A stretch of DNA of 64,000 nucleotides from NCBI GenBank assembly GCA_964019335.1, contig OZ025726.1, forward strand, positions 248,001 through 312,000. Reading direction: 5' to 3'. The position numbers and the translations under genes were made by a program. The stretch is from Diplonema japonicum. Taxonomy: Eukaryota > Protista > Euglenozoa: Diplonemea. This document shows, piece by piece, positions 22,566 through 46,620 of this stretch. The notes below the pieces were generated by a model. The model was not told where the DNA came from. It did not search any database and saw only the letters and a list, made by a program, of their open reading frames with translations. Within the stretch, counting starts at the first letter, position 1. Each line of letters starts with the position of its first letter.

Positions 22566-22622
22566 TTTGATATATTATACAGAGTAGCAACCACCCCCTT
22601 GACACCTCCCTCTTTGAGTACG

Positions 22623-22652
<30 letters not shown>

Positions 22653-22658
<6 letters not shown>

Positions 22659-23223
22659 TTCACTCTTCGTCATTTTCTTCACTCACTAGGGGCCTCATTA
22701 TTTAACGCGAAATGGCCATTATTTAACGCGAAACGGCCATTATTTAACGCGAAATCGCCATTATTTAACTAGTTAAATAATGAGATTTTGCAGTTAAATA
22801 ATGGCCCTTCAGAGTGAAAAAATGGGTCTTGTCGTGGAAAAAAATGCACCCAACCCCTTGAAAAATTTTTTTGGGGTGGGGGTATTTTGACTATTTTTGG
22901 CCATCTGAGGCCATTCCAGCCCTTAAAAGTGGGAATAAGTGCCTTACTTCCCCTTTAAATGCCACGGCGAAATAGCTACCCTGTATTACCTTAGGAAAAT
23001 CCCCAAAAAGCTGACCTGCGTGAAAAAAAACAGCAGTGAAAGCAGTGAAGAGTGAGTGACTCAAATGACGAAGAGTGAAATAAAACGACTTACTTGCCGC
23101 CAAATGAGCCATTATTTAACACTCGTTACCCGTTTTTTTGCACTCGGGCCCTGCGGGCCCTCGTGCAAAAAATTCGGGAACTCGAGTTAAATAATGACTC
23201 ATTATTTGTTGGCAATAAATAGT
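22653..23223 (+). mobile_element. Non-autonomous hairpin element with a 5' inverted repeat, an internal partner and a 3' long hairpin
   Basis: Perfect 23-bp inverted repeat 22653-22675 / 23063-23085, extending inward by 9 bp past a 3-nt TC-containing loop. Imperfect hairpin 23088-23223 ending AAATAGT. Poly-T on both flanks. Composition differs from the homopolymer-rich flanking intergenic DNA. Confidence 0.75.
22696..22805. repeat. 21-bp-period array of CATTATTTAAC: four forward and two reverse copies, including a perfect 24-bp palindrome at 22759-22782
   Basis: cattatttaacgcgaaaYSgc x3, then CATTATTTAACTAGTTAAATAATG, then gttaaataatggc again at 22793. Confidence 0.95.
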
Positions 23224-23767
23224 TATTTTTTTTTCTTAAACCCCGAGATCAGAGAGATTTAAAAAGAAAAAAAAAAGAAGAAAAAGGAATACTAAAAACG
23301 CAAAACACGGCCGGGTGGATGGTTGCCCTTCTTCTTCTCTTCAGAAAGAAAAAAAAAAAAAAAAAAAAGAAAAAGAAAAAAAGGAGGGGAAGGGGGGATA
23401 CAAGGATGCGAGTGCATATACCTTCTTTTACTGAAATCTCTCTCTCCCCTCACCTTCTTTCCTTTTTCTTGCAGTGGTGCCGTACCAACATATAGGTTTT
23501 CTTTTTTTTAAAAAAGAGAAAAAAAAAAGGTGGTGGGAAAGCACCGCCGTTTTTGTGAACTGATCTTAAAGATTTTCCTGCCTCTTCGGGGGAGCTTTTT
23601 TTTTTTTTTTTCGTTAAAGAATCTTCCCCGTTCTCGCTTTATTCAACTTCGACAAGTTCATCAGTTCCACATTTAAAGATAGAAGAAAACTACTTATAAC
23701 ACACAGAAAAAGAAAATGGGGGTTTTTGGAGCGCATGCAGGGCTGCAGTTAAAAAAGAAGAAGAGAA

Positions 23768-23816
<49 letters not shown>

Positions 23817-24327
23817 AACAGCTTGCACCAAAAGAACTAACCAGAACAAATAAAGAGGCGGGGGGACTTCCTACAGCGTTTGCACCCCCTCCTGGGGAGA
23901 GGGGAAACCAAGAAAAAGAGAAATGAATATAGGTGTATGGTTAAAAAAAAAAAAGATTTAAAAAAAAAAAATACTCTGATCTTCTCTTAGTTTCTACACA
24001 CAAAGGAAAATCGCAGAAAGGAGGTTTGGGATCTCGGGAAGGGGGGGGCTTCCTCATAAACTTGTAAGCGGTGCTTCAATCGCCGCATCAAAAATAGCAG
24101 AAAATTTAAGAGAGAAAAAAAAAAAGAAGAAGAAGAAACAATACATACATAGCTGGTTAAAACAAGGTTTAGTTTTGCGTCTATTGGTTGTAATAAAATT
24201 TTGACTCGGGTGTACCACCACCACCTCCTTGAATTTAAAAAAAAAAAAACTCGATAAAATTTCAGTGTGCATGGGGGTGCTCACTGCAAAAAAAAAAAAA
24301 AAAATGCAAAACAACCTTTTATGTATG

Positions 24328-24361
<34 letters not shown>

Positions 24362-24491
24362 TGTTGGTACGTAGATAGGGGGGGAGGGGAATGGGCGTGA
24401 ACCCTCAAATACACGAAGCAATAAAAAAATTTTTTTTTTTAAAAATGGTTTTTTTTTTTTTTTTTTTTTTTTTCTTTTTTTTTTCTCTTTC

Positions 24492-27400
24492 TTAAGGCTT
24501 CATCTTACCAACCTCTTCAAGAATAGTACTGATGATCTTTGAGTCCATGATCCCTATCGACATGAGATCTACCTTCTTCGCCGAGAGAAGCGCAGAGCCA
24601 TCGAAACCAGAAGCCTTGAGCAAAGAGGAGTACTGAGGAAGTTGCAATGTCTGCGACAACCAGAAATCAACATCATCAGCAGACCAAAGGTACACAGGAA
24701 CATCGGTTGCTTGTGAAGAGGGACTGTGCTTGAGCTTCTTGATGAACGCAAGCCTCGACACAGCAGAAGCACCTTTGCTCTGCGGCGAGACACAGATCCC
24801 AGCTTTGCTCAATTTCGTTGCCGTTTCGCGTTTGTTTTGAACATGCGTTTTAACAAAATTGCACAGATCAGCCACCAGCCTCACATCGACCCAATCAAAC
24901 GATGATGCTCGTGCGTAGCAGTCCTCTGTCTTGGCACGTTCCAAACATGTCAAAAGAGTACCAAGCGGTTTGATCTGATCGGACGACGCCACATCATCAA
25001 CTTCGATGAAGCAAAGGGGCCTGAAGCGAAGCCCGTTATTCGTCATCTTGTCGAACTCCTTCACAGCCTGTCGTGACCCGATGAACTCTTTCGAGACAAA
25101 TGCAACCGCAGCATCGCACCGCTGGTGCGCGTCCCTAAGATACTGGTTGTACTCCTTCCCCGTCTTGTGCCCTTCCCACATCGTGAAACACCCTGTCAGC
25201 CCGGGTTCCTTGCTCACAACCGCCCGCAAGAGGGAACAAATATTCGGTGCCTCCGCTGAACTACAACATATAAACACAGGCGGGAATTTTTCAAGGCTTG
25301 CAGAAGGAGACATCGGAGGCTCAGACGACATAGGACTGTGCATCGAATTAGTTTCAACTCCCGCTGACGATCGTGCGGTAGATAACGTACTTGATAATGT
25401 GGGCGATAACGGTGCAGGAGGTGGAGGAGTACCAGGCGGCGATGCCAGCTCTGATAACGGGCTTATAGCCGGGCGGTGTAACATCTCCGGCCTCTTTGCA
25501 GGCCTCGGTGATTTATGCAGTATCTCGGCAGGGGGTGCGGGCTCGCGTACGGGTTCTAGTTTCCGGACTTTTTCCCACTTTGCTTCGATCTTGCCGTAGT
25601 TCAGCCCTCCTAGGACAACGCCTTCAAGGTCTTTGAGGAACTCCCCTACACGGTCCTCGTCTCGAGGTACGTGCAGCACACCGTTCTTTTCTATTGTCTG
25701 CCGCACCCACGCATCTCGAACGTGTTTCTTTATAAATTGGTACTCATCACTGATGATGACGATGCGTAGATCATTCGAGTGCTTTAGCTGTGCAGCTGTT
25801 GCAATTGCGAGCTCGTTGGGTAGTGCGGTGCCCTGTAGGTGTAATTGGTTTAGTGTTTTTTTTTTTTTTTTTCTTAAATACCTCTTTCAGCAACGAGGTG
25901 CTTAGCACGACAAGAAACACATCCTTGTCTTGAAAAAATTTTAAAGCGCTTTCCACAGATTTGTCTGTGCTGAAGTCTTGTGTCGACAGTGACTGTGAGA
26001 GTGGGGGGGGGGGGGGGGGGGGGAAACTTCTTCTTGGGGGCAAATACCTTCACATCAATACCCTTTCCCTTTAATTCATCAACCACGTGAGCAGTTAAAA
26101 TGCCTTCTTTCGGCCCATGGCATATCATTCTTGCCTTACTGGCGGTGGTATCAGGCGTGTCGGCTGCGGCAGCTTTCTTCAGCCGCATAGAAGCTACCCT
26201 CGTGGTGATTTGTTTCTTTTTCCTCTCCGTTGCAGTGGAGAGCTTCGAGATGCCCTTGAGCTTGGTGGCCATCGCAGAGACGATCGGACTGAGTAACGCA
26301 GCAGGTTTAGGGGGTGCGAAAAAGGTTCCGCTTAGCAGAATTTTTCCAGCCTGTTAAAAATATATTAAAAAAAAAATCTTTTTTTTCCATACGTCAGTTT
26401 CTTCAAGGGAGAGCTCGATCAGTTCAGTTAATACTCTCGCAGACAAGTAGTTTTTTTGCAGCCCGTTTGCAAAATTTTCCACTTTCAACGCCGTCCCCGG
26501 TTCGGAATAGGTTTTCTTCGATTTTTTAATGAGATCTAGCATCGTGCTGTGCAACTTCTGATCTCTGTCGACAAGCTCTTTCCTCGCTGCCGCCTGCTGA
26601 ACAGCCGAACCAGTAGGCGAGGATGTGTGCCACGGCCCCCCGAATCTCAGATCGTTCCGTATCACGTTCTGGTCCTGCTGTGCTGAGAACTCCGACTGTC
26701 TTATCGATGAGCTCCTGTCAATATTAATGGCCCCGACGATGCCCGAGATCGAGGGGTAGAAGACATTGCATTGCTTGAGTTTGAGCTGGAGGGATCCGGG
26801 TTCGTAATGTCCGATGAACAGGCTGCTTCCTGTGTTTTCCACGATATTACATTCTCGGAGCTCTCCACCGCCTCCTGTTGTAATCTCGACCCCGGTGCTG
26901 GCATTGTCGTAAACGTCGGACTTAAGGAGAATGGGTTTGGAGTTTTGTGAGATTCTGACACCGACCTCAGTGCATCGTGAGACGTTTAGTTCGGAAACGA
27001 TCGCTCGGGCGGATTTGAACAGGACACCAACACGGTGGGACGTGATGATCACGCCTTGGATGAGAGGCTCGCCGTCAGGAAGCCCGCTTCCGTTGATGCC
27101 CTCGATCAACACACCGCACCCGCGTTCCTTCCCACCGTTTTGATACAGAACGTTGTTGTTCTTCATCACCCCGTTTGTCGCTGCGGCATATGACACCCCT
27201 GTGTGTTCATTCCCCGCTATTTCATTCCCGGTCATGAGGCAGGATGAATGAACGGTCCCCCGCAGCACAATCCCATCGTAGTTGGAACAGATTTTGTTGG
27301 AGTCTATGGTGCCGCCGCCGTTTTGGGTTATTTCAAAACCCACTTTGCAGTCGAATATAGAGTTTTGGACAAAGACAGGCCGTCCTCCATTGAGGACCTC

Positions 27401-30400
27401 GACACCCACATGCGACTTGCTTATCGTGTTGGATTCAAAAAGCGATCCAATCCCGCAGCATCGGATTCCTATGGTGTTCGCGGTCACTTCATTCTTCACG
27501 ATAGAGGTTGTTGCGTTGTGTGGTGTTGCTGTGGTGGTCTCGTCGCCTTCGGTGTAGATGCCGATGTCGTTTTGGAACAAGATGTTTTGTCCGACCTCTC
27601 CCCTTGCAGCTGCTTTGACCAGGACGCCGTATGAGCGGTTTACCGATTGGTTCCTCACAATGTAATTTCGGTCCACCTTCGGCCCCGCGTAGCTCCCTAT
27701 GACGACCCCTGCTATTTCCGTCCCCGATATGACATTTTGAGTGTAGTTCCCCAATCCATGCGATTTTATCAGGATTCCGTAGACCCCGCCGTGTATTGAG
27801 TTTCCGGTTACAGTCGGATCGCCTGCTGTACAGATAACGATGCACTCTTCTGTGATCCCTCTGATGCTGTTGTTAGTGATCACTCCCTTTCCTCCTTCGA
27901 TCGCAATGCCCACCGACGAACCGGACAGGACGTTCCTTGATATGGAAGGGTTGCTCTCTCCTATGATGAGAATGGCTTTTGGGGCGTTGTTGTCGAAGAC
28001 GTTGTCTTGAACGGTCCCATCCCCGGAGTTGAACACAAGACCCCCTACAGGAACCGTCGTCGATTCTGGGTCGGAAGGTGATAAACCGTTTTGAGTGACC
28101 TTGTTGAGCTGTATGGTGGGTTGACCTTTGTCCGAGACAAAGAGGCCGCAGGATCGATTTCCTAAGATCTGGTTTTTTCGGAAAAACCCCAGCCCGTTGG
28201 TGTGAACCGCCACACCGATCTCGTTGTCGGTGATTTGGTTTTGGGAGAATTCTGGATTTCCCGCATATGCGATCACCACACCCCGCGCATGGCGTAAAAC
28301 CCTGTTATTCGTGTACGTCCCTTGGCAAGAATGCGTGGCTTTGAACCCGATATCGTTGTCGCTGATGATGTTGCTGTCCACCAACGGTGCGCTGTCTGTC
28401 CCGCTCACGGATATCCCCACGTGCTGGTTATCTTTTATAACACAGTTTTCAACGACACCGCGGCCTCCCATTTCAACGCAGATTCCTGCTTTTTCAATGA
28501 AGGTGAACTCGCACTCTTTAATTAAAGGGTTTGCTTTGGTTTGGATTGTGATGCCGAAGTCGAGAAGCCTGGAGAACAGACAGCGTTGTATACTGCCGGT
28601 ACCTCCTTTTTCGCAAGCGATGCCTGTTGTGCAGGGTTGTTTCGGGTCGGACACGAACGTGCAGTCTTCGATGCTCGGGTTTGCTTGCTGCGATATTTTT
28701 ATAGAGAGATGGTTTGTGAATGTGGTGTGCCGCCAAGAGCTCCTTGCGGAGCCTGAGAAGCTTACCCCGCAAGGGTTATCAACCACTTGGCAAGACACAA
28801 AGGCGGGGTTTGCGTTCCCTGCTACTTCCACACAATGATGGTAGCCTTTGGAGAACTTGCAGTTCGTGAAATGCCCGCCACCGTTTACGCATTTCAACCC
28901 AACATTGTTCTGTTCAAACACGGCGTCGTCGAAGGTTGGGTTCGCACCTTCCCCGTCCACCACCGCACCGCAGCCTCCTGCGTGGTTTGTGAACTTGTTG
29001 TTCTGAGTGTACACTCCCAACCCTTCATCGCCGATCCATAGCCCAGCTTGGACCTCGTTGGTTCCTTCGAACGTGTTGCCTTTGACATCGGGTGATCCTT
29101 TTGTATCTACACATAGCCCTTTTGAATTCCCGACTAGATAATTCGACACAATTTCACCCTTCCCATCTCGTATAACGTGGATGCCTTTGGTATTTCCTAG
29201 ACCTTCCCGGGGGTCGCCGATTGTGTTAGCCTCCATTCGGGGGTTTGCCTCTAACGATATCAACACGCCGGTTGTGCAGTGGTATATTTTGTTCTCGATG
29301 AGGATCCCGTTCGCGTCTTTCGAAGCGCACAGAACACCGACCGTGGAACGGAATAGGGTGTTTTTCAGGATTGTCGGGCTCGATCCGGCGTGAATCTCAA
29401 CACAGCATCCCGTGCAATCTTTGATAGAGTTGTTGTCAAAGATGTTGCGGGCATCTCTCTGTGCGATGACGCCTATCTTTTCATTGTGGATGTCGTTCTG
29501 CGTGAACTCCACAGCGGACAATCCTTGGACAAGCACACCAGACAGCGTGTTTCGAGAGATATCGTTTCCTACGACAGACCCCGACGAACCTGTTAAGCAA
29601 CAGACGCCGTGTTCGTTTCCCTCTAGCCAGTTTCCTTTAATCAACGACCCGTCGCTGCCTTCAAGTGTCACGCCGCTTATCGAACTTTTTACGGTGTTTT
29701 CCGTGACTTCACCCGCCGCGCCTTCCCCGCAATGGATCCCGCTGGCTCCCTTGCAACTGTTTTTAACATCGTTCTTCGCGATCCTCGGGTTCGAACCCTT
29801 GAAAAGAGATACTGCACCCTTTTGAAACCCACCATGCAGCGTGTTGTCCTCAAAGGTCCCGGTTGCTTTTTCCGTGAAAACGACACCTTGACCAGATTCG
29901 TTCCCGGTGAACGTGTTCCGACAGAATGTAAGATCGGAAGTAGAGGCGAGGTAGACAGAGGGGGTACCGAGGTTGGCTTCATTGGTGGGGGTGAAATGGT
30001 TTTGGGTAAATATGGCGCAAGCGAGTCTACCGTGGCCCCAAACATTGACGGTGCCTACACCACTGAAGGGGAAACCATCGACTTGTGCGTGGTAGATCGG
30101 CTCGGTGATTGTGTTCCTTTTGAAGATTGGGGTAGGTTTCTTTTCAGGTTCATCGTCGTCGGGCTGCTCCTCTGCGTCATCATCTGAGCCATCCAGTTCG
30201 ATATTGACACCGTTTTGAGTTATCACGTTCTTCTCGAAAATCACTGAAGATCGAGAAACAACAACGACACCCCGGAACTGCTTCCTGATGTTGTTTTTGA
30301 CGAAGGAACAGTGTCCGGTGTGAGATTCGATCCGGACCCCTCCGATGCTGTTCTGTTCAATGTCGTTCTCGCGGAAGACACCCAACGACCCGCCCACACG

Positions 30401-32311
30401 AACGCCGTACCCGCCTGAAGAACCTTTTACCGTGTTTTTCAAGAATACTGGGTCGGAGTTCGATGTTATGTGCACGTTGTCGGTTCCGTTGTCGCTTATG
30501 GTGTTGGAGGTAAAGGTTCCGAACCCCTGCGATGCACAGAGGACGCCTATGCCTTGGCCCCGTGATATTGTGTTTGAAGTGAAGATCGGGTTCCCACCTT
30601 TCTGAACGGCGATTTGAGGGGAGAGAGATTCGTTTTCCATAATGCTGTTGTTGGCGAACCTACCCCGGCCGAACGAAGTGACAAGGATTGAACCAGCGCC
30701 TGGCCCTGATGAGGACGAAGAAGCAGGGGGAACCTTGCCTTCTGTAGTGTTTCTCTTCGTGGGACCGTTTCGAAGGAAGAGATTGTCGTTTTCAAAAACC
30801 GGGTCAGCAGAGCGTCGGACGACCACGGCGTAATTACCAGACCACCCGTTTCGGGTGAATGTGTTTTTTTCGAACCTCCCCTTAGCGTGGCTGCTGCAGT
30901 CGACGGCGACTGTGTTCGCAAACATCTCGTTTGAGAGCATGACCGGGTTCCCCCCGGTTTCAATGAACACTCCCAACGAGTTTTGCTTCACCTGATTCTC
31001 TTCGAAAATACCTGTCGCCCCATTCACAACAGCGATCCCGGGAGATGTGGATGCATCGTCGTGGTCCCTGACGTCGTTGCCCATCGCGTCAATTTCAACA
31101 GCCGAACCGGTTAGAAGAAGACCTGGGCCTTTGTTCGCTTCGATAACGGTTCTTCGAAGTTTTGCAGTGATCGTTTTAGGAGTTTGGGCCGCAGGGTCTG
31201 ACACGAGAACGATCCCGCCCTTCTCGTTGTTTTCGATCCTGCAGTCCTCGAAGATAGGGGTGAAGCTTTGCGACGAGTTCGCCTGTGAAATGGTCGAAGA
31301 CGAGATCACCACACCAAACCCACCACAGGCCGATATAATGCAGTGGTTTGAGAAGCAAGGAGACGAGGACAGGACGGTGACCCCGTTCCCGTTGTCGGAG
31401 ACAATGTTGCAGCGTTCGAACCCAGGGGCCGCACCGTTGACGATGGTGACGGCCGAGTGGTCGTCGATGAGAGAGGGGTTCAGCGTGAATTTGCTGGAAA
31501 GAGACGACCTGTGAGTTTTAGGAATCCAGGTAACAGACGGAGCGTGATATCCTGCGTCCTCAATGTGACACGCGTAGAATTTCGGCTGCGGTTTAGTCCG
31601 CTGCGATGACTCATCCATGCACCCTGAGATCAAGATTGTCCGCGAGTGAGACGACCCAATGGTGCATCCTATGAATTCAATTTCTCCTGTGGATGTAACT
31701 GATACAGATGCTTCCTTGTTCTTTCTTATATCACATGCGTCGATCTTGGCTGAAGCTTCCCCTCTGAGCTGCACCCCGCACCGTTGCGAACCAGAGAAAG
31801 TACACTTCCGAACCTGAACCGAACCTGCGTGCGTCTCATTTCCGTGAACATCCATTCCTTGTACGAAACATTCGCTGATACGCGCGGTGCCTTCAAAAAC
31901 AGATATTGCCGTGCCTGATGTGTTTTTGCACTTAATTAAAAGACTCCTGATGTCGCATCCTGACTTTGATCTGCAGATAATCGTGGCTTCGCCACGTGAT
32001 TCTAGTATCACCTCACCGTCGCCATGTAATTCTACATATTTATCTAGTATGAGTTCTTCAAAGTAAGTCCCGTGATGGATTAAAACCCGGTCTCCGGGTT
32101 CTACATAGTCGATGGCTCTCTGTATGCTGTTGAAGTACCCGTTGTGTTTCCCATGCTTCACGATGAACTCTCTCACTCTCTTCCCTTCCCCTTCCCCCGG
32201 TGTTGTGTTCTGATACGCCGATGTTATCCATGTGTAAAACCACCCGTCTACAGAGTCGTACCCGTACTGATCTTCCGTTGCATCTTTTGTGAAAGCGGTC
32301 TTGTTGACCAT
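24492..32311 (-). CDS. ~2557-aa protein: long right-handed beta-helix (PbH1/NosD/FBXO11-like) repeats, TIR-like domain, Pro-rich linker, TIR domain, SAM domain. Exons 32311-26393, 26350-26048, 25992-25882, 25832-24492
   Basis: YFNSIQRAID...GDRVLIHHGTYFE start and dozens of 'GNPxxxxNxI' coils. Three phase-0 GT-AG introns (26351-26392, 25993-26047, 25833-25881) join four ORF-track entries. PVFICCSS...AVAFVSKEFIGSRQAVKEF is TIR-like; WSADDVDFWL...LPQY...FDGSALL...DLMSIGI is SAM-like. Confidence 0.85.
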
Positions 32312-32558
32312 TTACTTTTAGTGTGGAGTTTTTTTTTTTTTTAGAAAAAAGATGCGGAGATGAAAAAAAATTTTTGTGGAGTACACATGCCTAAGATGAA
32401 AAAAGAACGGAAAAAAAAAAAAAAAAAGAGGGTGAAGCTAGTGGGAGAGATAAGAAAAATTTTTTAAAAGGCACTGGTGAAGCTAAATTACGAAGACAGA
32501 CAGAACATGTGTATGGAAAAAAAAAAGGGGGGGAAAAAAGTATAGGGCGAATATGAGT

Positions 32559-35180: not shown

Positions 35181-35552
35181 TTTTTTTTTTTTTTTTGGTT
35201 CCCCCCCTTTTTTTTATATTTGGAGTGTGGGGGGGAAAAAAAAAAATGTATTTTACCACTTTTTGGGAAGAGATGTTTCTCTCGGCCCTTACGTACTCTC
35301 CTGGGCATGTCCGCTCAGCAGGCATAGCGAGGAACGATGGTGTGGGTAAAGGTTTGGTTTTTTTTTTTTTTTTTTTTAATTCCCAGGGAGGGACGCGGGA
35401 AAAAAAAAAATAGAATGAAAAGGAAAAAAAAAAAAAAAAGAAGAAGAGAAAAAAAAATATAAAAAGGAAAGGAGTAAAAGACACTGGTATGGTAAGAAAA
35501 AAAAAGGAAAAAAAAAAAAAAAAAAACAACGGAAGTATAAAAGAAAAATCGG

Positions 35553-35587
<35 letters not shown>

Positions 35588-35630
35588 ACTAATCTCAATT
35601 AGAAGAAAGAAAGAAAAAATTGCATTTTTG

Positions 35631-35671
35631 CTAAACCTCAGGGTTCAGTTCAAGAAGGCGTTTCTCAGAGG

Positions 35672-35714
<43 letters not shown>

Positions 35715-36435
35715 CCAACCCGCACATACTTTTCAAATGGAACTCATGCACTGTGAGAGCTTCGGACCAATTTTCAAGCTCTGACGTGAAAAGTTTCGGC
35801 ATGTCGACTTGCTTTGGTCCGCCCATCGACCCCTCCGCCATGTTCTTGAAATGTTCAGCCTCATCCAACTCAGAGGCACCATCAAGAACCAAGGTAATAA
35901 TACCCCTGACCCCGAACATGACCAGAAAGTGACCGCAAAGAGAGGTAATATAGGTGACTTCAAGAGTCGGGTGCTCTATCCCCCGCTGGAGCATTCCTCT
36001 GAAACGGGAAGTCAGTGGGAAGGGCAGTTTTGCAATGACGAAAGAAGGGAAGAAGTACGACACAAACTGCATCATGACCAAGTGGGGCCCGATCTGAAGC
36101 AGCTGCTGGGTCATCATGCCGCGCATTTGCATGGGGTCTCCCATACTTGCCATGGGGTTGCCCTCGTCGCTCTCCGGTTTTTCTTTCAACAGTATATTCA
36201 TCTTCCGCCTTCTTTCCTCAAAACTATCTTTCGGAACCCACCCCCTGTTGCTCCTTGTATACACCGCTTTCTGAATCGTCTGCGTTTCTTTCATAAACTC
36301 CGGGCTGTATTCTTTCCTGTCCTTCATCAAGAGTGCTGCATAATGTTTAAACAGCTGCACCACCAGCGTGATCACCGCGATAGGGATCAGCGCCCACGCC
36401 CTGATATTGGGGTCCAATAATACTATCCCTGTCAT
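35631..36435 (-). CDS. EMC3: ER membrane protein complex subunit 3. Exons 36435-35730, 35671-35631
   Basis: LLDPNIRAWALIPI and FVIAKLPFPLTSRFRGMLQRGI...LEVTYITSL. Intron 35672-35729 restores an EMC3-like end, HEFHLKTSEKRLLELNPEV*. Confidence 0.92.
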
Positions 36436-36942
36436 TGTTTGGCCCACCCCCCTCTTTTTTTTTTTTTTTTCTTCTCAAGGGCAAAAAAAAAAAAAAAAAA
36501 AAATTATGGGAGAAAAAAAAAGAGGGGAAATAACAATCACCACCGTAATAATGTAAAGAGAAAAAAAAAAGAGGGGGGCTACAAAGAAAAAAAAAACTGA
36601 AACCAATCGTTTTTTTTTTTTTTTTTTTTTTTGACATTGAGAGGAGAGAGATATGAGAAGAGGCTTGATTTCACTTCCTTTTTTTTCTTCTCCCCCTCCT
36701 TTTTTTTTTCATTGTGATATAAAAAAAAAAACAAAAAAAAAAAACAAAAAAAACTATCCACGATGGGAGGAGAGTATTATTATTATTTTCTTTTAAAAAT
36801 CAACAACTCTACCACAATTGGCAAAGATGAAGAATCCGCAATGCTTCAACACGCGGAGTATTTTTTCTTTTCTTTTTTTTTTCCTTTTTTTTTTCCCCCT
36901 TTCTCTCCCCCATCATAATGTTTCTCGTGAACGAGAAGTAAG

Positions 36943-36977
<35 letters not shown>

Positions 36978-36997
36978 GTTCTATTCTAAATCCCTAC

Positions 36998-39013
36998 TTA
37001 AGTGCACCCATATGCCCAGTGCTCCGACGCAAACACGTACTTGTAGATCGTGACAAGCGGGTGAGGAAGGGACGCCAAGCATCGATAATACTCCGGTGCA
37101 ATTTCACGAAGTTTTGGCAAAGCGGACCACGGCAGGTTAGGGAAATCGTGGTGCTCGGTGTGGTAGGTGAGGTTCAACGTCAAGAACGAGAACACAGGAG
37201 ATGCGTAACAAGACTGCGTGGGCTGACACGGCCTGTTGTGCTCAATGTTCCCAGCCACCCCGGGCGCCGTCTTGTGAACACCCAAAAAGTAAGCCCCCAT
37301 AGGATGCAACCCGAACCCAGCAAGAAACATCTCAGAAAGACCCAAATACAAACAGACATTCAACAGTTGATAAATACCCCCCCGGCCCATAAACAGCACC
37401 AGAAACAACATGAAAAACGATTGTTTCCCGATTTCAAGCATTTCCCTCGGCTTCCCCATGACACCGGGGACCCTGTCCATGCCCCTCCCACATGTCATGA
37501 CAAACGCAGAGATGTAAAGAAGCCCCGACATTCCTGTCCAAAACATTATCAGCATCAAGTGGCCGATGTGGATTGTACTGTCGCGAAGAAGTACGAGAAA
37601 AGGTCTTACTAACGATGGAACACCGTCCATGGGCTTTCTCGGTACGAAGCTACCGGTCACGGTGAGATCCATGACCTTGCCACGAAGCTGTGCGGTGTAG
37701 CTGTGAAGAAGATCTCCGTCCACCTCACGGCCTTCCAAAAACGCATCGGCTGCTTCCTTAAAACCCTGCGACCCTAGCAAAGCATGATGCCCAAGGTGGT
37801 GGTGCGCATAATAATTGAACAGCCCGCACCCCATACTGGGCAGTGTGCAGAATTGAAGAACCGGCAATTTAACATTCGGCTGCGACACCCAAGACGACAC
37901 CGCGTTGTGACAGATCTCATGTCCTATTGCGAATTGCAACGTTTTACACAAAGCCCCAACTGTATAAGCCAGAAGGAATACTGTTAAGAAACTGCACTCG
38001 CTTGCCGCACAACCAGTGAACAGGTGAACAAAGAACGTGGTCACACCGATCAACAACGACAACGGCTCGTGTTTGGGCAAATTTTCAATTTCTGGGTGAT
38101 CATGAAGGATGGCAGATCTTCTGTTGCTGTGCCACACTGCAGGGGAATCAGGCGTATCCGGAGTAACATCCAAAATGTACATTTCTCGTGAAAGATACTG
38201 AACAGGGGTCCCGTCATCAGGTTGTGCTGAGACCCTGCCCACGTCGGTCATTCCTAGACAGGTAGCACGGACGTTGTTGGCTGTGAGGGTAAGCCTGTCG
38301 CCTTTGACAGGAACCATCCCACCGATTTCAATTTTTACCTCTGTGAGATCGGTGTGGTCGTGGACGCCGAAGCCGTGGGTTTCTTGGGTTTCTTCGTTGT
38401 TGACTGCGATCAACCAACGTCCTGCGTACTTAGAAAACGTGGACTCGCCAAGATGGTTCCCAGGTACACCACCGATAATGACGGTGCCTCCACGGTGGCA
38501 GATACCCAAGGATTCGTCTTGCTTTTTGGTTATGGTGAAGGTTGCCTTCTCGTTTGGGTCGGGTAACTTCAAGTTCGAGAGGCAAAGGTGTTGTTGGTAG
38601 AACGGGGCCGGGAACACTACCACAGCACCAGGTTTTCCTGTTGGTGTTGTTTGGTGGGCGACAAGCTTTCCTCTCCATCCGTTGCAGTTTCCAGGTGCGC
38701 GGAGTCCTATTGCTTCGGCATATGATCCCACAGTGAAGGCTGGTGTGGCATCTTCGTCTTTGTTGAGTTGTTCGGGTTCTGAAAGGGGTCCCAGGAAATA
38801 TTGTCCCAGGGCTTGTTTCGCAGCTTCGCTGTGTCCTGCTTTCTCGAACAGTGTTGTTCCGTCGCCCCCAGCGTGTCTCAAGAGTGGTTCCATCCCGCCT
38901 GGATGGTGCCGCATTAGATCTTTCATTTCATACACGTATCCACCTATTGCGACCCATGGTGTTCCACTCTCTTTACCATGCTCGGACAGTTGTTCTTTTG
39001 TTATCCACGCCAT
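36998..39013 (-). CDS. Sphingolipid delta-4 desaturase (DES1/DEGS-like) with an N-terminal cytochrome b5 domain (671 aa)
   Basis: Cytochrome b5 motif HPGG...AGGDGTTLF..GHS; DES1 N-terminal motif HSNRRSAILHDHPEI; His boxes HEICH, HHHLGHH, YHTEHHDFP. Confidence 0.9.
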   Translation of the reverse strand: MAWITKEQLSEHGKESGTPWVAIGGYVYEMKDLMRHHPGGMEPLLRHAGGDGTTLFEKAGHSEAAKQALGQYFLGPLSEPEQLNKDEDATPAFTVGSYAEAIGLRAPGNCNGWRGKLVAHQTTPTGKPGAVVVFPAPFYQQHLCLSNLKLPDPNEKATFTITKKQDESLGICHRGGTVIIGGVPGNHLGESTFSKYAGRWLIAVNNEETQETHGFGVHDHTDLTEVKIEIGGMVPVKGDRLTLTANNVRATCLGMTDVGRVSAQPDDGTPVQYLSREMYILDVTPDTPDSPAVWHSNRRSAILHDHPEIENLPKHEPLSLLIGVTTFFVHLFTGCAASECSFLTVFLLAYTVGALCKTLQFAIGHEICHNAVSSWVSQPNVKLPVLQFCTLPSMGCGLFNYYAHHHLGHHALLGSQGFKEAADAFLEGREVDGDLLHSYTAQLRGKVMDLTVTGSFVPRKPMDGVPSLVRPFLVLLRDSTIHIGHLMLIMFWTGMSGLLYISAFVMTCGRGMDRVPGVMGKPREMLEIGKQSFFMLFLVLFMGRGGIYQLLNVCLYLGLSEMFLAGFGLHPMGAYFLGVHKTAPGVAGNIEHNRPCQPTQSCYASPVFSFLTLNLTYHTEHHDFPNLPWSALPKLREIAPEYYRCLASLPHPLVTIYKYVFASEHWAYGCT

Positions 39014-39167
39014 TTTTTTTTTCCTTTTTTGGTTTTTCCTCCCCTCCCTCCCCTCCTTCTTTTCCAGCTAAAAGAGATAAGTAAAGGGGGGGGGGGGGGG
39101 GGGAAGGGGGGGGTAAACACAATCCCATCTCTCTTGTAACTTGTCGTTTTTTTTGTCCCCCCCCCCT

Positions 39168-39727
39168 TCAAACCACGAAACCCCACCCACCGTAGATCGG
39201 TAAATTCAAATTTTTGATCAAAACACCTCCAGAAATCTTTTCGGACTCGTGTTCCTTTGCCACTTCCCCGTTCAACCCTAAGACAAAGATGCTGGTGACA
39301 TTAGCAGTGGGTGGGGTGTAAGGAACGTCAGCAGGCGGCATTGCGGTGAACGGTGTGGTGGGGAGAGAGTGTGCGCAGGTCACCGTTAGGTTTCGGCTTG
39401 AGAAGGAGAGAAGCTTGAAGTTGTAGTAGCCTTGTTTGTATTTGAAGGTGTGACCGTCATCCAGGTAGACACGGCCGGTGGCAGTTTGGGTGTCTGGGTC
39501 AAGCGCAACCTTTTTTAAACATTGTTATTTGCTTTCTTCATGGCATACCCTTAATCTATACCCGACCTTTTTGAGGTCCACGGTCGATCTCGTAGCCGCG
39601 TCCTTTTCCTTGGTCACCACGATCGTCCCACCCCGTTGGTACATGGGAAGCGAGCTCAGCTCCACCTGGACCTCGTGCGTGTCGCCCCCGTTGTATTTCC
39701 TCCCACTAAAATACTCGTACCAAGCCT

Positions 39728-39773
<46 letters not shown>

Positions 39774-41835
39774 CGCTTCTTTTTTGCGAAGTGCATACCC
39801 CATCCCCTGGCATTGTAACTGGCTGAACATGGGCTGATTTAGAAACGATAGGAGCAGCCAGGATCGCGTCGCCGAACATAAAGGCGTCCGACCGCTTCGC
39901 CCTCTCTTCCGGGAACTCTAAGAAGAGAGGACGCAACACAGGGATGCCCTCCGTCGACGCGTTCCAGAACATGGTATAAAGGTACGGAAGCAGCGTGTAC
40001 CGAAGGTGGAGCGCATCCGCTATGACAGACAGTTGTTCAGGGGGGTTGAGGTACGGCTCCTTGCGTTTGTTGTCGTGGTGGGAGTGGCCACGGTAGAAAG
40101 GATAGAACACCCCGAGTTGGAACCAACGAGCCATGAGGTCAGGGGTGGAGTTTTCAAAGAAACCCCCCACATCGGCGCCGACGAAGGGAATTCCTCCCAT
40201 TCCGAGCCCGAGAAGCATCTCGACAGAGGCTTTTAAATGCGCCCATGATGCTTGGTTGTCGCCTGTCCAAATTGCTGCGTATCTTTGCGTTCCTGCGAAG
40301 AACGACCTTGACAGGACGAATCCTCTCTTCTCACCGTTTGTTCTGGCGAGCAGACCCTCGTGGGTTGCCCTGGCGTGCAAATGCCCGTAAATATTGTGAA
40401 CTGCGATGTGTTCTGAGCCGTCATAATGCCTAGCATCGTCGTGCATTGTGGTCCGCGGTCCTGAGAACACGGAAGGCTCGTTCATGTCGATCCATGTGTG
40501 GAGGTCTTCTGTCGAGCCTTTATATTTATCGAAGTAGAACAACCCGGCGTACCACTCCCTTGCGGCTGGGTTTAAGAAATCCACCCAACTGCTGTCGCCA
40601 GGCCAGCAGTGTCCGTGGTATTCAGAGTTTCCGTTTTTATCCTTGACAAAAAGTTCCTTGGCGTGGGCTTCGTCATAGACGAAGTACCCTTTCGACCTGG
40701 AAATGTGTGGGTCGGAGATTGTGATGAGCTTTCTCCCGTCTTCTTTTAAGCTGTCTTGCATTTTTAACGGTGTTGGGAATAATCTCTTGTCCCATGTGAA
40801 ATAGTGTTTTTTCTCGGTGTGCTCGATGTCCAGCCAGATCGCGTCGCACGGCATTTTGTTGTCGATGAATTTTTTGCTCACGAAATCCACGTCGTGCTCG
40901 TCATGGTAGTTCCACCTGCACTGGTGGTACCCAATTGAAAATTCGGGTGGCATAAACGGTTTTCCAGTGACGACAGAATGCTGCCTCAAAACGTCTGCTG
41001 TGCTCGGCCCGGGGTATATCACGAACTGTTGACAATTTCTGGCAGATTTCCACGTTGTTTTGGTGTTGTCGTGAACCTTCACAGACGTCTTCGCAGGGTT
41101 CAACCATAAAAACCCTGAAGCATCTGTCGAAGACACCCCGACAACGATGGGAACGATTCCGTAAAGAGGCGCTTTGTCGTTTAGCTTGTACTGAAACACA
41201 TCGAGGTTCCACAATTCGTAATCACCGTTTTCCAAGATAAGACCTGATGTCCTTTCGGGAAGCCCGGTCATTGACTCAACATTTTTGAGGTGAACGTCTG
41301 TCTCAGAAGATGAAATATCAACAGAAACAGCGATGTTTCCGGATTCGAACCGAATAGTGTCGCCCTCTGTGTGGAATTTCAGTTTGAAACCTGATTGAGT
41401 ATCTTTTACATAGTTATTTTCAATATCGTGTGATATGGGAACTGGTGTCAATCCCTCGTCTAGAACGGTATCTTGGTACTTGCAATGTTCGGTGTCCACC
41501 TGGACATGGAAGATTCCGTTTCCGTAGGATGAGATGTCGACAGGTTTCCCCAGGACCATGAGGGTTTCTTTTCGTTTCCCTCCTGTTGCCATTGCGGTGG
41601 GTTTTTTCTTGTTTTCTGTTTTTTCGTGGGTTTGACTTTCACGCAGGGGCAGCGGTGCCTTCTTGTCGTGCGTGCCCAGTCCTTCCTCGTGTGTCACCAG
41701 TTCGTGTAAGTTCCTCGCGCCTTCGTCCGGGATGCCGCTCTTCCCGTGGACTATAATGAACACTCCGTAGACACAGCCTAACATCACTACGAACCTTATG
41801 GGGTACCTTCCTATTTCCCTGCGTACGGATCTCAT
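39168..41835 (-). CDS. GANAB: Glucosidase II alpha subunit-like GH31 alpha-glucosidase (~851 aa). Exons 41835-39799, 39725-39549, 39509-39168
   Basis: GYHQCRWNY, IWLDIEH, WIDMNEPSVF, IWTGDN, GADVGGF. Introns 39726-39798 and 39510-39548 give ...QRGGTI...ATGRVYLDDG. Confidence 0.92.
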
Positions 41836-41860
41836 TATTATTTTTTTTTTCTTTCTTTTC

Positions 41861-41895
<35 letters not shown>

Positions 41896-41913
41896 CCGTT
41901 TCCTCCGGCCCCT

Positions 41914-41947
<34 letters not shown>

Positions 41948-42192
41948 CAAATGATTTTATAACTTTATGCAACTTGTGCCGAGCATATAAATTTTTTTTT
42001 GCTCGTGCGAACAACACAAGACATATGGTCATAATCTTACCCAGAAAGCAAGGAAAAAAAAAAAATAATAACAAACAAACAAACAAAAAAAAGAAAAAGA
42101 AAAAGGGTGAAAATAAAGTTCTTTCTATTCCCCTCTTCCCCCCCCCCTTTTTTTTGTTTTTTTTCTTCTTCCCCCAGTATTCTTCCCGCTTT

Positions 42193-42255
<63 letters not shown>

Positions 42256-42261
<6 letters not shown>

Positions 42262-43371
42262 CTCGAGCCGGGTTTTCAAGGGTGGGAGTGAAAATAATAT
42301 TTTACATTATGTCACTCCCAGCTTTATTTTGGGCCTAATTTCACATATTTCGCCTATTTTTACAATGGGAAGGAAGCCGAAGGCAATGGGCAAAAAAGGT
42401 GAAGGGTACAAAGGCAGAGACGTCGAAGATCATGAACGCCAGCTTGCCATGAAAAGCACCAGCACTTACGAAGCAGAGTGGCACCGCTTTTGCTCTTTTC
42501 ACAACTTCAGAACAACAAGATCGAAAAGCCCGACGGAAGACGAGTTGGTAATGTATTTCCAAGATATGAAGGACAATTTGGGCAAGCTACAGCAAGATCA
42601 ACGGCATCATCCAACGAAACTTCGGTAAAAAAATGCAGAGCTTTCCCAGGGTTGCACTTCTTTTGAAGCGCTTTGAAGAAGGCCATGAGGTGAAAAAAGC
42701 TTCGGTGTTTCGTCAGGAACAAATGAAAGAGTATCTGGCAATGAAAATCAGCGACCCCTACAACATAGTGTGTCAGGCATATGCAGCTTGCATGTTTGCA
42801 GGACAAAAGAGTCGCACAAACTGAAATTTAACGACGACACCCTGTAACCCAAATCCCACTTTTCACCTGTTGTAACCCTGTAACCTCCCACCCTTTCAAA
42901 CCCGGCTCTTGTCATCAGTAAAGTCATTACTTGTTGGCAGTAAATAGCATTAGTAACCCTCTGCAGAAAGTAACTGAAGAAAAAGGAGGGGTTTATGGTA
43001 CGATCTGTTATAATCTGACGATTATGCTGGAGCGTCGGTATTGTCTTCCTATAATCCATGCAGATGTGTCACCACGCAGGCCCTTTTGGGTATCACCTCT
43101 TAAAACCTAGTCACTATAATAATAAATAATAACAAGAGAAAAACAACATACACGGTGGTGGCAGGTTTAACTCGTAGCTTTTTACTTCAAATTTCCTCAT
43201 TTAACTTTGCAAAAATTAAGTAAAATATCATACTAAATAAAAATCAGCCAGATTTTTACTCAGAATTTTTTTTTTTACACTCGCTTCGCTCGTGAAATTC
43301 AACTACTCGTGAAAAAAAAAAAAAGATTCTTCGTAAAAATCAGGTAATCTGATTTTTATTTAGTAAATAGT
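42256..43371 (+). mobile_element. Decayed tyrosine-recombinase (Crypton-like) DNA element with an inverted repeat and a 3' hairpin
   Basis: 22/24 inverted repeat 42265-42288 / 42885-42908. Hairpin 43231-43365 with perfect 17-bp outer arms and a cactcgcttcgctcgtg apex. AAATAGT end, poly-T flanks, internal YR-like remnant. Confidence 0.75.
42365..42824 (+). pseudogene. Frameshifted, truncated tyrosine recombinase (core-binding domain and start of catalytic domain)
   Basis: KSTSTYEAEWHRFCSF...PTEDELVMYFQDMK, a frameshift near 42570, then TIWASYSKINGIIQRNFGKKMQSFPRVALLLKRFEEGHEVKKASVFRQEQMKEYL...AACMFAG. Similarity is lost where the first catalytic Arg (GxR) would be. It is the only recognisable + strand coding remnant in the window. 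Confidence 0.7.
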
Positions 43372-46506: not shown

Positions 46507-46578
46507 TTTCTTTTTTTTTTTTTTTTTTTAAATAACCCTCCTCCACCGCCTCCTTTGCTGTATTGTGCGGGTTGTGTA

Positions 46579-46620
<42 letters not shown>

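What the first reader, a model, noticed from the sequence alone, without database searches (positions are those of the whole stretch)
22653..43371. Family of hairpin-ended elements with symmetric TC/TC mismatches, linked to a tyrosine recombinase
Two insertions with different sequences (22653-23223 and ~42256-43371) share one grammar. Each has a poly-T flank, a 5' inverted repeat whose partner is internal, a ~135-bp 3' hairpin, an AAATAGT end and a second poly-T flank. Both arms repeatedly carry the same unpaired TC: cacTCgggccc-tgc-gggcccTCgtg, acTCgtt/aacTCg, cacTCgc-ttc-gcTCgtg, tttacTCagaat/attctTCgtaaa, and gggtttTCaaggg/cccttTCaaaccc in the long-range repeat. Such mismatches matter only if a single strand folds, and they distinguish the two strands. 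Integron integrase (attC) and XerCD on CTX phage are tyrosine recombinases that act on folded ssDNA (established). One copy encodes a YR remnant, so this may be an autonomous/non-autonomous eukaryotic YR transposon system that moves via structured ssDNA and targets poly-T (inference). Crypton-like YR transposons are known; I cannot tell whether this exact structure has been described.
Basis: partly seen in the sequence, partly recalled or inferred. Interest (0 to 1): 0.88.

Follow-up and report, generated by a model that had tools for sequence, protein, structure and literature searches.

The report
Hairpin-ended tyrosine-recombinase transposons in T-runs
The two insertions are cut-down copies of small jumping genes moved by a Cre-like tyrosine recombinase; their ends are built so that the joined ends sit in one long DNA hairpin with conserved, strand-specific mismatches, a layout reported so far only for bacterial elements that recombine as folded single strands.

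Summary
Both insertions lie in T-runs and share one grammar. The 5' end pairs with a segment just inside a 120-135-nt imperfect palindrome, and the element ends in AAATAG(T/C)(T/C)A.

Element 1 (22657-23225) has at least 40 identical copies. A 1682-bp relative has the same ends (88-90% identity) and one intact 367-aa tyrosine recombinase (YR) as its only long ORF. Element 2 is a rearranged copy of a second family whose 1.6-kb members encode a frameshifted YR. A third family shares the plan. The genome holds about 500 such 3' ends. It has no Helitron Rep hit and only two PIF1-helicase hits.

The C-TC-G/C-TC-G mismatches are not chance. They recur in all three families. They also recur next to distant YR relatives (21-43% identity) in 72 metagenome contigs, with a fixed polarity relative to the hairpin-side terminus. 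Natural tandem junctions fold into one long hairpin.

The best reading is a Crypton-type YR DNA transposon group with an undescribed structured-end architecture that targets T-runs. Recombination as folded single strands is plausible but unproven, and I could not obtain an empty site.

Other agents of this scan reached the same reading on other DNA of this genome. I found no paper describing it.

The parts
22626..22656 (+). 5' flanking T-run (T31) of element 1; the target tract
   Evidence: all 20 fetched copies have a T-run here, at least 11 T except in tandem copies
22657..23225 (+). Element 1: 569-bp non-autonomous family-1 element (ATTTCAC...AATAAATAGTTA)
   Evidence: at least 40 copies 100% identical; 5' 344 bp is 88% and 3' 195 bp is 90% identical to the 1682-bp YR-encoding element in L062
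22657..22687 (+). 5' asymmetric terminal inverted repeat. Together with the last 4 T of the flank it pairs with 23051-23085
   Evidence: I9: 35 nt, 91%. The mismatch is TCT opposite CTC, pyrimidine against pyrimidine
22696..22804 (+). Subterminal 21-bp repeats carrying the CATTATTTAAC motif (3.5 direct copies, then 2 inverted). The same motif recurs in the 3' hairpin arms; candidate recombinase-binding sites
   Evidence: D2, D3, D8, I1
23051..23085 (+). Internal partner of the 5' end (3' ATIR), ending in AAAT-AAAA. The AAAA faces the flanking T-run in the fold
23094..23215 (+). 3' imperfect palindrome with C-TC-G/C-TC-G mismatches
   Evidence: z -8.1 on the top strand, -8.9 on the bottom strand
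23140..23166 (+). Hairpin tip GCAC-TC-GGGCCC-tgc-GGGCCC-TC-GTGC. The relative in L062 carries the inverted form GCAC-GA-GGGCCC-GA-GTGC
23214..23225 (+). Conserved 3' terminus AATAAATAGTTA
   Evidence: ATAAATAGYTATT occurs 519 times in the genome against 4 for the control
23226..23234 (+). 3' flanking T-run (T9)
42194..42255 (+). 5' flanking T-run (T62) of element 2
42256..43373 (+). Element 2: rearranged, non-autonomous family-2 element, single-copy as a whole
   Evidence: (only a self match for 1-1116; its parts are present in dozens of loci)
42258..42288 (+). 5' ATIR of element 2, pairing with 42885-42915. Includes a TC/TC mismatch (GGGTTT-TC-AAGGG / CCCTT-TC-AAACCC)
   Evidence: I1: 31 nt, 84%
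42366..42830 (+). Remnant of the tyrosine-recombinase gene: N-terminal core-binding part up to the first catalytic-Arg region, with stops, and with the catalytic C-terminal half deleted
   Evidence: 91% DNA identity to L034:1538-2043; the L034 ORFs hit PF00589
42885..42915 (+). 3' ATIR of element 2
42930..42949 (+). Internal second terminus-like site (CTTGTTGGCAGTAAATAGCA), resembling the 3' end of a family-1-like element. It marks the composite nature of element 2
43231..43365 (+). 3' imperfect palindrome of element 2
   Evidence: z -9.1
43278..43294 (+). Conserved hairpin tip CAC-TC-GC-TTC-GC-TC-GTG
   Evidence: 98 genome copies of this tip lie 55-85 nt before a 3' terminus
43365..43373 (+). 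3' terminus AAATAGTCA
43374..43385 (+). 3' flanking T-run (T12)

Best explanation
Both insertions are non-autonomous or decayed members of a group of very small (1.5-1.7 kb) DNA transposons. The only enzyme these elements encode is a Cre/Xer-type tyrosine recombinase, so they are Crypton-type elements. The host is a diplonemid, Diplonema japonicum or a very near relative.

Shown:
- The elements are multi-copy and young.
- They sit in T-runs, with T on both sides and no other duplication.
- They have a conserved 3' terminus AAATAG(T/C)TA.
- The 5' terminus is complementary to the segment just inside a long imperfect palindrome at the 3' end.
- As a result, the joined ends (as in a circle or a tandem pair) lie in the arm of one hairpin of about 110 bp.
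- The stems carry C-TC-G/C-TC-G mismatches of fixed polarity. This design is shared with distant relatives elsewhere.

Inferred:
- The recombinase excises the element as a circle and re-inserts it by site-specific recombination in a T-run.
- The recombination site is presented as folded DNA, either a single strand or a cruciform.
- The pyrimidine-pyrimidine mismatches (tandem G.A on the other strand) serve as structural marks for the enzyme, much as unpaired bases do in integron attC sites.
- The AAAA just 5' of the hairpin foot, which faces the last four T of the flank in the fold, may read the T-run target.

My odds for the separate claims:
- Tyrosine-recombinase transposon: 0.9.
- T-run insertion without duplication: 0.8.
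- Folding is functional: 0.6.
- Strand-specific single-strand recombination: 0.35.
For: Copy number and flanks:
- At least 40 identical copies of element 1, all with T-run flanks. Tandem copies are separated by only TT, TTTT or T11.
- The 3'-terminus pattern occurs 519 times against 4 for the control.

Encoded enzyme:
- L062 holds a 1682-bp element with the same ends and a single 367-aa ORF.
- Families 2 and 3 have the same plan and also encode a YR.
- The catalytic R, H-x-x-R, W and Y are invariant, and a SAM-like N-domain is present.
- The profile matches Cre over both domains, and XerC/D over the catalytic domain.
- There is no Helitron_like_N hit, and only 2 PIF1 hits in 62.5 Mb.

Mismatch pattern in this genome:
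- TC/TC is the dominant internal loop, with 11 contexts. GA/GA occurs only at tips.
- 18 of 35 predicted pairs in family-2-like hairpins show compensatory double changes. The tip pairs are invariant and the TC columns stay unpaired.

Distant relatives:
- Metagenome contigs encoding YRs 21-43% identical carry the same palindromes and CAC-TC-G...C-TC-GTG tips.
- Hairpin tips with GA/GA: 19 observed against 3.9 in shuffles. With TC/TC: 8 against 3.2.
- Polarity rule: palindromes upstream of the gene have 10 GA/GA and 0 TC/TC loops. Downstream ones have 9 TC/TC and 1 GA/GA.

Folding of joined ends:
- Natural tandem junctions fold as one hairpin at -67 to -69 kcal/mol in this genome.
- A distant 1541-bp relative folds at -65.9 kcal/mol, z -11.7.

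Expression:
- A D. japonicum transcript is 97% identical to the family-3 YR.
Against: - No empty site, circle junction or polymorphic insertion was seen. Short-read contigs break at the T-runs.
- Covarying inverted repeats alone could also serve double-stranded protein binding.
- Hairpin tips occur in both orientations (98 to 28), so at least there the identity of the mismatched strand is not fixed.
- The closest YR-encoding relative of element 1 is only 88-90% identical. The exact source of the 40 identical copies is therefore not identified.
- Family-2 coding copies are frameshifted.
- The 5' T-run of young copies is always long (at least 11 T) and the 3' one short (2-17 T). A simple symmetric crossover in a T-run does not predict this asymmetry.
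Confidence: 0.6

Rival explanations
1. These are ordinary double-strand Crypton transposition. The recombinase acts on a short duplex core at the circle junction and at a T-run. The long palindrome and the 5'/internal inverted repeat are accessory: protein-binding arrays, a replication or transcription signal, or selfish palindrome growth. They never need to fold.
For: The YR is a Cre/Xer-type enzyme, and such enzymes normally use duplex sites. Motif repeats such as CATTATTTAAC in both ends look like binding-site arrays. Tip orientation is not fixed.
Against: Symmetric binding sites predict true inverted repeats. They do not predict the same TC on the same strand in both arms at many positions, in three families and in distant relatives. 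The junction of the ends lies about 100 bp from the dyad axis, which is not a normal core-site layout.
Confidence: 0.27
2. These are Helitron2/Helentron-type rolling-circle elements. The DNA grammar (asymmetric terminal inverted repeat, 3' hairpin, insertion after T-runs without duplication) is theirs, and the recombinase gene is captured cargo mobilised by a RepHel protein encoded elsewhere.
For: The terminal layout matches the published description of Helitron2: a 5' ATIR at the end, a 3' ATIR upstream of a hairpin, and insertion after TTTT without duplication (PMC3627910).
Against: There is no Helitron_like_N match and only two PIF1 matches, one of them probably the host gene, in 62.5 Mb. 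Three diverged families and many metagenome relatives all couple this grammar to a YR gene. Elements 1541-1682 bp long have room for nothing else.
Confidence: 0.03
3. These are retroposed copies. The long 5' T-run is the poly-A tail of an antisense transcript, copied into A-rich targets by a LINE or DIRS reverse transcriptase.
For: The 5' T-run is long and variable (11 to over 60 T) and the other one short. The genome has LINEs and DIRS-like elements.
Against: T- and A-runs of 15 or more are everywhere in this genome (66 in 64 kb), so the tracts pre-exist. Family-2 copies can have only 3-4 T. There are no 5' truncations among 40 copies. Tandem copies are separated by TT or TTTT. A distant relative has no T-runs but has TAA at both junctions.
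Confidence: 0.04
4. Hairpin-end replication or resolution. The palindrome is cut and resealed into a covalently closed hairpin end (protelomerase-like), or is copied by hairpin transfer as in parvovirus termini. That process creates the flip and flop forms.
For: The tip is inverted exactly, loop included, in 28 of 126 copies. Some family-2 copies have two small arms on one stem, a T- or Y-shape. Protelomerases are relatives of tyrosine recombinases (established knowledge).
Against: Only the tip flips; the outer mismatches never do. The palindrome is subterminal and the copies are integrated with defined ends. The profile matches Cre/Xer, not telomere resolvases.
Confidence: 0.06

Closest known systems
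Crypton DNA transposons (Goodwin et al.; Kojima and Jurka 2011, PMC3212892)
   Same: They are small DNA elements whose only enzyme is a tyrosine recombinase with a core-binding domain and a catalytic domain. They have no reverse transcriptase and no target-site duplication, and they show short identical sequence at both junctions (here T-runs; TAA in a metagenome relative). Non-autonomous derivatives outnumber coding copies. The best YR matches outside the host include proteins annotated from a coral and a beetle.
   Different: Published Cryptons are described as having neither inverted nor long direct terminal repeats. These elements have a 5'/internal inverted repeat, a 100-150-nt imperfect palindrome abutting one terminus, conserved C-TC-G mismatches, a conserved terminus motif, and homopolymer targeting. 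I found no report from Euglenozoa.
Helitron2 / Helentron (Bao and Jurka 2013, PMC3627910)
   Same: They share an asymmetric terminal inverted repeat whose 3' partner lies just upstream of a 3' hairpin, insertion next to TTTT without duplication, and compensatory changes in the pairing.
   Different: Those elements use a RepHel (HUH plus helicase) protein, and none is detectable here. Here the palindrome is far longer, and the enzyme is a tyrosine recombinase.
Integron attC sites with IntI, and CTX-phage attP(+) with XerCD
   Same: A tyrosine recombinase is coupled to an imperfect palindrome of about 60-150 nt. The sequence of that palindrome varies, but its structure and unpaired positions are conserved and strand-polar. 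The crossover point lies in the stem near the foot.
   Different: Those systems are bacterial and their single-strand mechanism is proven. Here it is only inferred. The mismatches are symmetric 2x2 loops rather than single extrahelical bases. The YR profile matches Cre/Xer better than IntI4.
IS200/IS605 (IS608) single-strand transposons
   Same: They have subterminal imperfect hairpins, no duplication, and insertion next to a short fixed target. A short internal sequence 5' of the hairpin foot is complementary to the flanking target (here AAAA against the T-run).
   Different: IS608 uses an HUH Y1 transposase, and no such gene is present here. The guide-like role of AAAA is my inference.
DIRS retrotransposons
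   Same: They have a tyrosine recombinase, and an internal region complementary to the element ends that is thought to bring the ends together in a single strand.
   Different: DIRS elements encode reverse transcriptase and RNase H and are 4-6 kb. These elements are 1.5-1.7 kb with one ORF.

Membership tests
Crypton (tyrosine-recombinase DNA transposons) | Encodes a tyrosine recombinase with the catalytic R, H-x-x-R, H/W and Y | tested here: met
   PF00589 hits. R107, H206, R209, W232 and Y241 are invariant in alignment A2. The profile matches Cre, XerC and XerD.
Crypton (tyrosine-recombinase DNA transposons) | No reverse transcriptase or second transposition enzyme in the element | tested here: met
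   The L062 element is 1682 bp with one ORF of 150 aa or more. The L105-group element is 1541 bp.
Crypton (tyrosine-recombinase DNA transposons) | No target-site duplication; short identical sequence at both junctions as the recombination substrate | tested here: inconclusive
   T-runs lie on both sides of all 20 fetched copies, and TAA on both sides in the L105 group. No empty site was obtained.
Crypton (tyrosine-recombinase DNA transposons) | Absence of terminal inverted or long direct repeats (a description of published members, not a mechanistic requirement) | tested here: not met
   A 31-35-nt 5'/internal inverted repeat and a 120-135-nt palindrome are present. For this reason I file it as a new variant, not a plain member.
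Crypton (tyrosine-recombinase DNA transposons) | Recombinase groups with reference CryptonA/I/F/S proteins in a tree | not testable with these tools
   No Repbase sequences were on hand. The only indirect evidence is that the best non-host hits are unnamed eukaryote contigs and coral, beetle and Daphnia-named proteins.
Helitron2 / Helentron | RepHel (HUH Rep plus PIF1-like helicase) protein in autonomous copies | tested here: not met
   PF14214: 0 candidates, though without a positive control. PF05970: 2 matches in the genome. The coding copies carry a YR instead.
Helitron2 / Helentron | Asymmetric terminal inverted repeats with a 3' hairpin, and insertion at T-rich sites without duplication | tested here: met
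Integron attC-type folded recombination site | Imperfect palindrome with conserved, strand-polar unpaired positions despite sequence divergence | tested here: met
Integron attC-type folded recombination site | Recombination of one folded single strand by the recombinase | not testable with these tools
   This needs biochemistry or strand-specific in vivo assays.
IS200/IS605 | HUH Y1 transposase (TnpA) | tested here: not met
   The only ORF of the coding copies is a YR.
DIRS-like retrotransposons | Reverse transcriptase and RNase H beside the YR | tested here: not met
   The element size and single ORF exclude them. The separate DIRS-like loci L048-L050 are unrelated in sequence.

The most novel reading that the evidence does not exclude
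This is a widespread eukaryotic group of tyrosine-recombinase transposons that recombine as folded single-stranded DNA, in the manner of integron attC or CTX phage. The joined ends and an internal splint form the substrate hairpin. Tandem pyrimidine-pyrimidine (or sheared G.A) mismatches tell the enzyme which strand and register to use. A short internal A-tract base-pairs with the T-run to select the target, which would make targeting DNA-guided as in IS608. The exact flip and flop of the hairpin tips would then be a by-product of hairpins that really form in vivo.
Probability: 0.33. Interest if true: 0.9.

Novelty: new variant of a known kind. Interest (0 to 1): 0.78.

Why it matters
Tyrosine recombinases that act on folded single strands are known only from bacteria (integrons, CTX phage). 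Eukaryotic Cryptons are the least understood DNA transposons: no transposition has been reconstituted and no defined ends are reported. Here there are precise ends, a young 569-bp family with at least 40 identical copies, and an intact 367-aa recombinase. There is also a conserved, easily mutated DNA structure shared with distant relatives. Together these make the mechanism directly testable. If the fold is the substrate, it would show that single-strand site-specific recombination also exists in eukaryotes. It would also offer a compact recombinase-plus-hairpin system with homopolymer targeting. Practically, the terminus motif and the hairpin rule give a way to annotate hundreds of otherwise unclassified repeats in diplonemid and environmental genomes.

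Tried and rejected
Steps that gave nothing or were blocked:
- The search for homologous proteins with the L062 recombinase found nothing. The full HMMER scan then found 6251 relatives.
- Read laying on 20300-25700 with four runs. Logan contigs stop at the T-runs (22612-22616), so there was no empty-site or junction information. It showed only very high summed depth on the element, and related pieces in a second organism.
It was repeated with A2.
It was rerun in parallel.

Hypotheses rejected:
- Helentron reading: no RepHel.
- Retroposon reading: see the rival explanations.
- T-run targeting places the recombinase gene behind a host polypyrimidine tract for trans-splicing. In this window both elements are antisense to all flanking genes.

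Other:
- The 513-bp insertion in L124 relative to L078 is not obviously of this kind and was dropped.
- L109, from an assembly labelled human-gut metagenome, took part in the earlier scans and folds of all 72 metagenome loci and in an all-against-all BLAST. I left it out of the junction analysis. I do not take it for human DNA.
Full report
THE OBSERVATION

At 22626-23234 and 42194-43385 two unrelated sequences share one layout. Each has:
- a T-run (T31; T62);
- a terminal stretch complementary to an internal stretch (22653-22687 with 23051-23085, 35 nt at 91%; 42258-42288 with 42885-42915, 31 nt at 84%);
- a long imperfect palindrome (23094-23215; 43231-43365);
- a terminus AAATAGTTA or AAATAGTCA;
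- a second T-run (T9; T12).

Both palindromes fold far better than shuffles on either strand (z -8.1 to -9.1, none of 200 shuffles as good).

The boundaries are ATTTCAC...AAATAGTTA (22657-23225) and ATATAAC...AAATAGTCA (42256-43373).

COPY NUMBER AND FLANKS

Element 1 matches at least 40 places in the 62.5-Mb genome at 100% identity over its full length. In all 20 copies I fetched, the element is preceded by a T-run and followed by TA plus 2-17 T. The preceding run is at least 11 T except in tandem pairs. Tandem copies are separated by only TT, TTTT or T11.

T- or A-runs of 15 or more occur 66 times in this 64-kb window. The tracts are therefore a general property of the genome and a plentiful target, not a product of the element.

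The 3'-terminus pattern ATAAATAGYTATT occurs 519 times in the genome, against 4 for the backwards control.

Element 2 as a whole is unique, but its parts recur in dozens of loci. It is a rearranged family-2 copy made of four parts:
- the body with a recombinase remnant (42366-42830);
- a second terminus-like site at 42930-42949;
- about 200 bp shared with four other loci;
- a solo hairpin and terminus.

WHAT THE ELEMENTS ENCODE

A Pfam integrase search of the genome gave 30 matches.

- Family 1. L062 (G000:C7) holds a 1682-bp element. Its first 323 and last 184 bp are 88-90% identical to the two ends of element 1, and it has the same termini and T-run flanks. Its only long ORF is an intact recombinase, 367 aa from the ATG.
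- Family 2. The 1599-bp copies (L032-L034) encode a recombinase about 30% identical to that of L062, broken by frameshifts.
- Family 3. L041-L046 have different sequence but the same plan, with 5' ATTTCACAG... and 3' ...GGAATAAATAGTTA between T-runs, and they encode a third recombinase.

The proteins have an N-terminal SAM-like core-binding domain and a catalytic domain. R, H-x-x-R, W and Y are invariant. The profile aligns with Cre over both domains, and with XerC, XerD and XerA over the catalytic domain.

The genome gives no Helitron_like_N candidate and only two PIF1 matches. A RepHel-driven, Helentron-type explanation therefore has no enzyme, even though the DNA layout matches published Helitron2 ends well.

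THE HOST

The best match in a 1.8-billion-protein library is a Diplonema japonicum transcript (E 4e-124). It is 97% identical to family-3 copies. The genome is therefore that diplonemid or a very close relative, and the family-3 recombinase is transcribed.

THE STRUCTURE IS CONSERVED, NOT THE SEQUENCE

I folded every distinct 3' end in the loci at hand. In all three families:
- the stems carry C-TC-G opposite C-TC-G at several steps;
- the tip is CAC-TC-GC-TTC-GC-TC-GTG or a close variant;
- a box AAAT-AAAA-C lies just 5' of the hairpin foot;
- the terminus box AATAAATAG(T/C)TA lies just 3' of it.

TC/TC is the commonest internal loop, with 11 distinct contexts. GA/GA occurs in 3 contexts, all at tips. 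Every other 2x2 loop occurs once.

The long-range 5'/internal pairing carries the same kind of mismatch in each family:
- TCT opposite CTC in family 1;
- TC opposite TC in families 2 and 3.

An alignment of nine family-2-like hairpins gives 35 consensus pairs. Of these, 18 show compensatory double changes. The tip pairs are invariant and the TC columns stay unpaired.

THE SAME DESIGN IN DISTANT RELATIVES

The recombinase profile finds 6251 proteins (E up to 0.001). They include proteins annotated from a coral and a beetle, and many unnamed eukaryote contigs.

A scan of metagenome contigs returned 72 loci encoding relatives 21-43% identical. Many carry long imperfect palindromes with the same C-TC-G or C-GA-G steps and CAC...GTG tips.

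Counts of hairpin tips with a symmetric GA or TC mismatch:

| Mismatch | Observed | Dinucleotide shuffles |
|---|---|---|
| GA/GA | 19 | 3.9 |
| TC/TC | 8 | 3.2 |

The other non-homopolymer mismatch types are near or below expectation. Among the homopolymer types, AA is near expectation, TT is above it (22 against 8.0), and CC was not observed (1.2 expected).

There is also a polarity rule:

| Palindrome position relative to the recombinase gene | GA/GA loops | TC/TC loops |
|---|---|---|
| Upstream | 10 | 0 |
| Downstream | 1 | 9 |

Read from the hairpin-side terminus inward, the polarity is therefore constant. Only the orientation of the gene differs.

One relative is present as four or more copies, 98.7-99.7% identical, with different flanks (L105, L107, L108, L121). 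It is 1541 bp with TAA at both junctions. Its palindrome starts 2-3 nt from the 5' terminus. Its 3' terminus is complementary to the segment just inside that palindrome, which is the mirror image of the diplonemid plan.

THE JOINED ENDS LIE IN ONE HAIRPIN

Natural tandem junctions have the same sequence as a circle junction. In L001 and L019 they fold as one continuous stem at -67 to -69 kcal/mol. In L014, where the first copy has lost its hairpin centre, the fold is -52.6 kcal/mol. The internal partner pairs with the T-run plus the next copy's 5' end, and the palindrome forms the distal part. The distant L108 junction does the same (-65.9 kcal/mol, z -11.7). In the fold, the AAAA of the AAAT-AAAA-C box faces the last four T of the flank.

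FLIP AND FLOP

The relative in L062 carries the tip of element 1 in exactly inverted form (GA for TC). Genome-wide, I counted tips lying 55-85 nt before a 3' terminus:
- 98 are of the TC form;
- 28 are the exact reverse complement, loop included;
- the controls give 0.

Both forms occur within one subfamily, with identical outer arms. The outer C-TC-G steps never flip. One locus has both forms side by side. I cannot say what inverts the tips. Template switching at a hairpin that really forms during replication is the simplest idea. The finding weakens the claim that the mismatches always mark one strand.

HOW IT MOST LIKELY WORKS

Shown: these are mobile, young, recombinase-encoding elements with defined ends in T-runs, and with a conserved structured-end design.

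Inferred from established tyrosine-recombinase chemistry and the Crypton model (PMC3212892): excision as a circle, and re-insertion by recombination with a T-run, leaving T on both sides and no duplication.

Inferred from the mismatch pattern, its polarity and the junction fold: the site is presented as folded DNA, by analogy with attC, CTX attP(+) and IS608.

A duplex-only mechanism predicts true inverted repeats, which is not what is seen, but it is not excluded. Two things remain unexplained: the asymmetry of T-run lengths (a long 5' run and a short 3' run), and the absence of any empty site in my data.

COMPARISON WITH WHAT IS KNOWN, AND NOVELTY

By enzyme and life style these are Crypton-type elements. 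Published Cryptons are said to lack terminal repeats, and their boundaries are hard to define. Full-text searches gave the following:
- Crypton with hairpin, palindrome or stem-loop: no description of this architecture.
- Diplonema with Crypton: no paper.

I therefore rate it a new variant of a known kind.

After I had reached these conclusions I looked up the scan's own notes. Several follow-up reports on other windows of this genome describe the same group: hairpin-ended tyrosine-recombinase transposons, joined ends in one hairpin, flipped tips. The scan has therefore found this before on other DNA. Those notes agree with mine but are not independent evidence.

LIMITS

- Read laying gave only contigs that break at T-runs.

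Noticed in passing
window, whole: Homopolymer T or A runs of 15 nt or more occur 66 times in 64 kb, about one per kb, mostly between genes. This is an unusual genome-wide feature that several transposon types here seem to exploit.
   Followed up: partly
window 16752-48132: All ORFs of 500 aa or more in this stretch are on the minus strand, and both elements are antisense to them. Element 1 lies about 90 nt upstream of the ATG (22565) of a 1937-aa ORF.
   Followed up: partly
window 24101-24281: Another very high-copy repeat: summed contig depth in the thousands, against 14-43 for the single-copy flanks in the read-laying table. It is not related to the finding.
   Followed up: no
window 46574-46617 (-): T37 followed by ATTACAC on the minus strand. 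This is possibly the 5' end of a further element of the same kind.
   Followed up: no
L048-L050 (G000:C74, C114, C25): GC-rich ORFs of 542-549 aa with an integrase domain, followed by further long ORFs. These are probably DIRS-like retrotransposons, unrelated in sequence to the small elements.
   Followed up: no
about 30 genome loci listed (e.g. G000:C84:226276-226413): Open frames of 59 aa, about 50% identical to the GHSYRR region of the family-2 recombinase. This looks like another high-copy family carrying a recombinase fragment.
   Followed up: no
G000:C28:541503-541530: A flop tip and a flip tip lie directly side by side (CGAGCGAAGCGAG-T-CTCGCTTCGCTCG). This may be an intermediate or product of the process that inverts tips.
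   Followed up: no
L124:2405-2916 versus L078:1240: In a metagenome relative, a 513-bp insertion is flanked by ACCT on both sides. Its nature is unknown.
   Followed up: partly
run X11 (organism B): Contigs of a second organism carry pieces nearly identical to element 1 (22795-23139). This could mean a related species with the same family, or carry-over between samples.
   Followed up: no
alignment A2, C-termini: Many recombinases of this group, from diplonemid to coral, end in a short conserved strand-like motif of alternating hydrophobic residues and N (such as VNININ or VFNINL) after a low-complexity linker. Its function is unknown.
   Followed up: no
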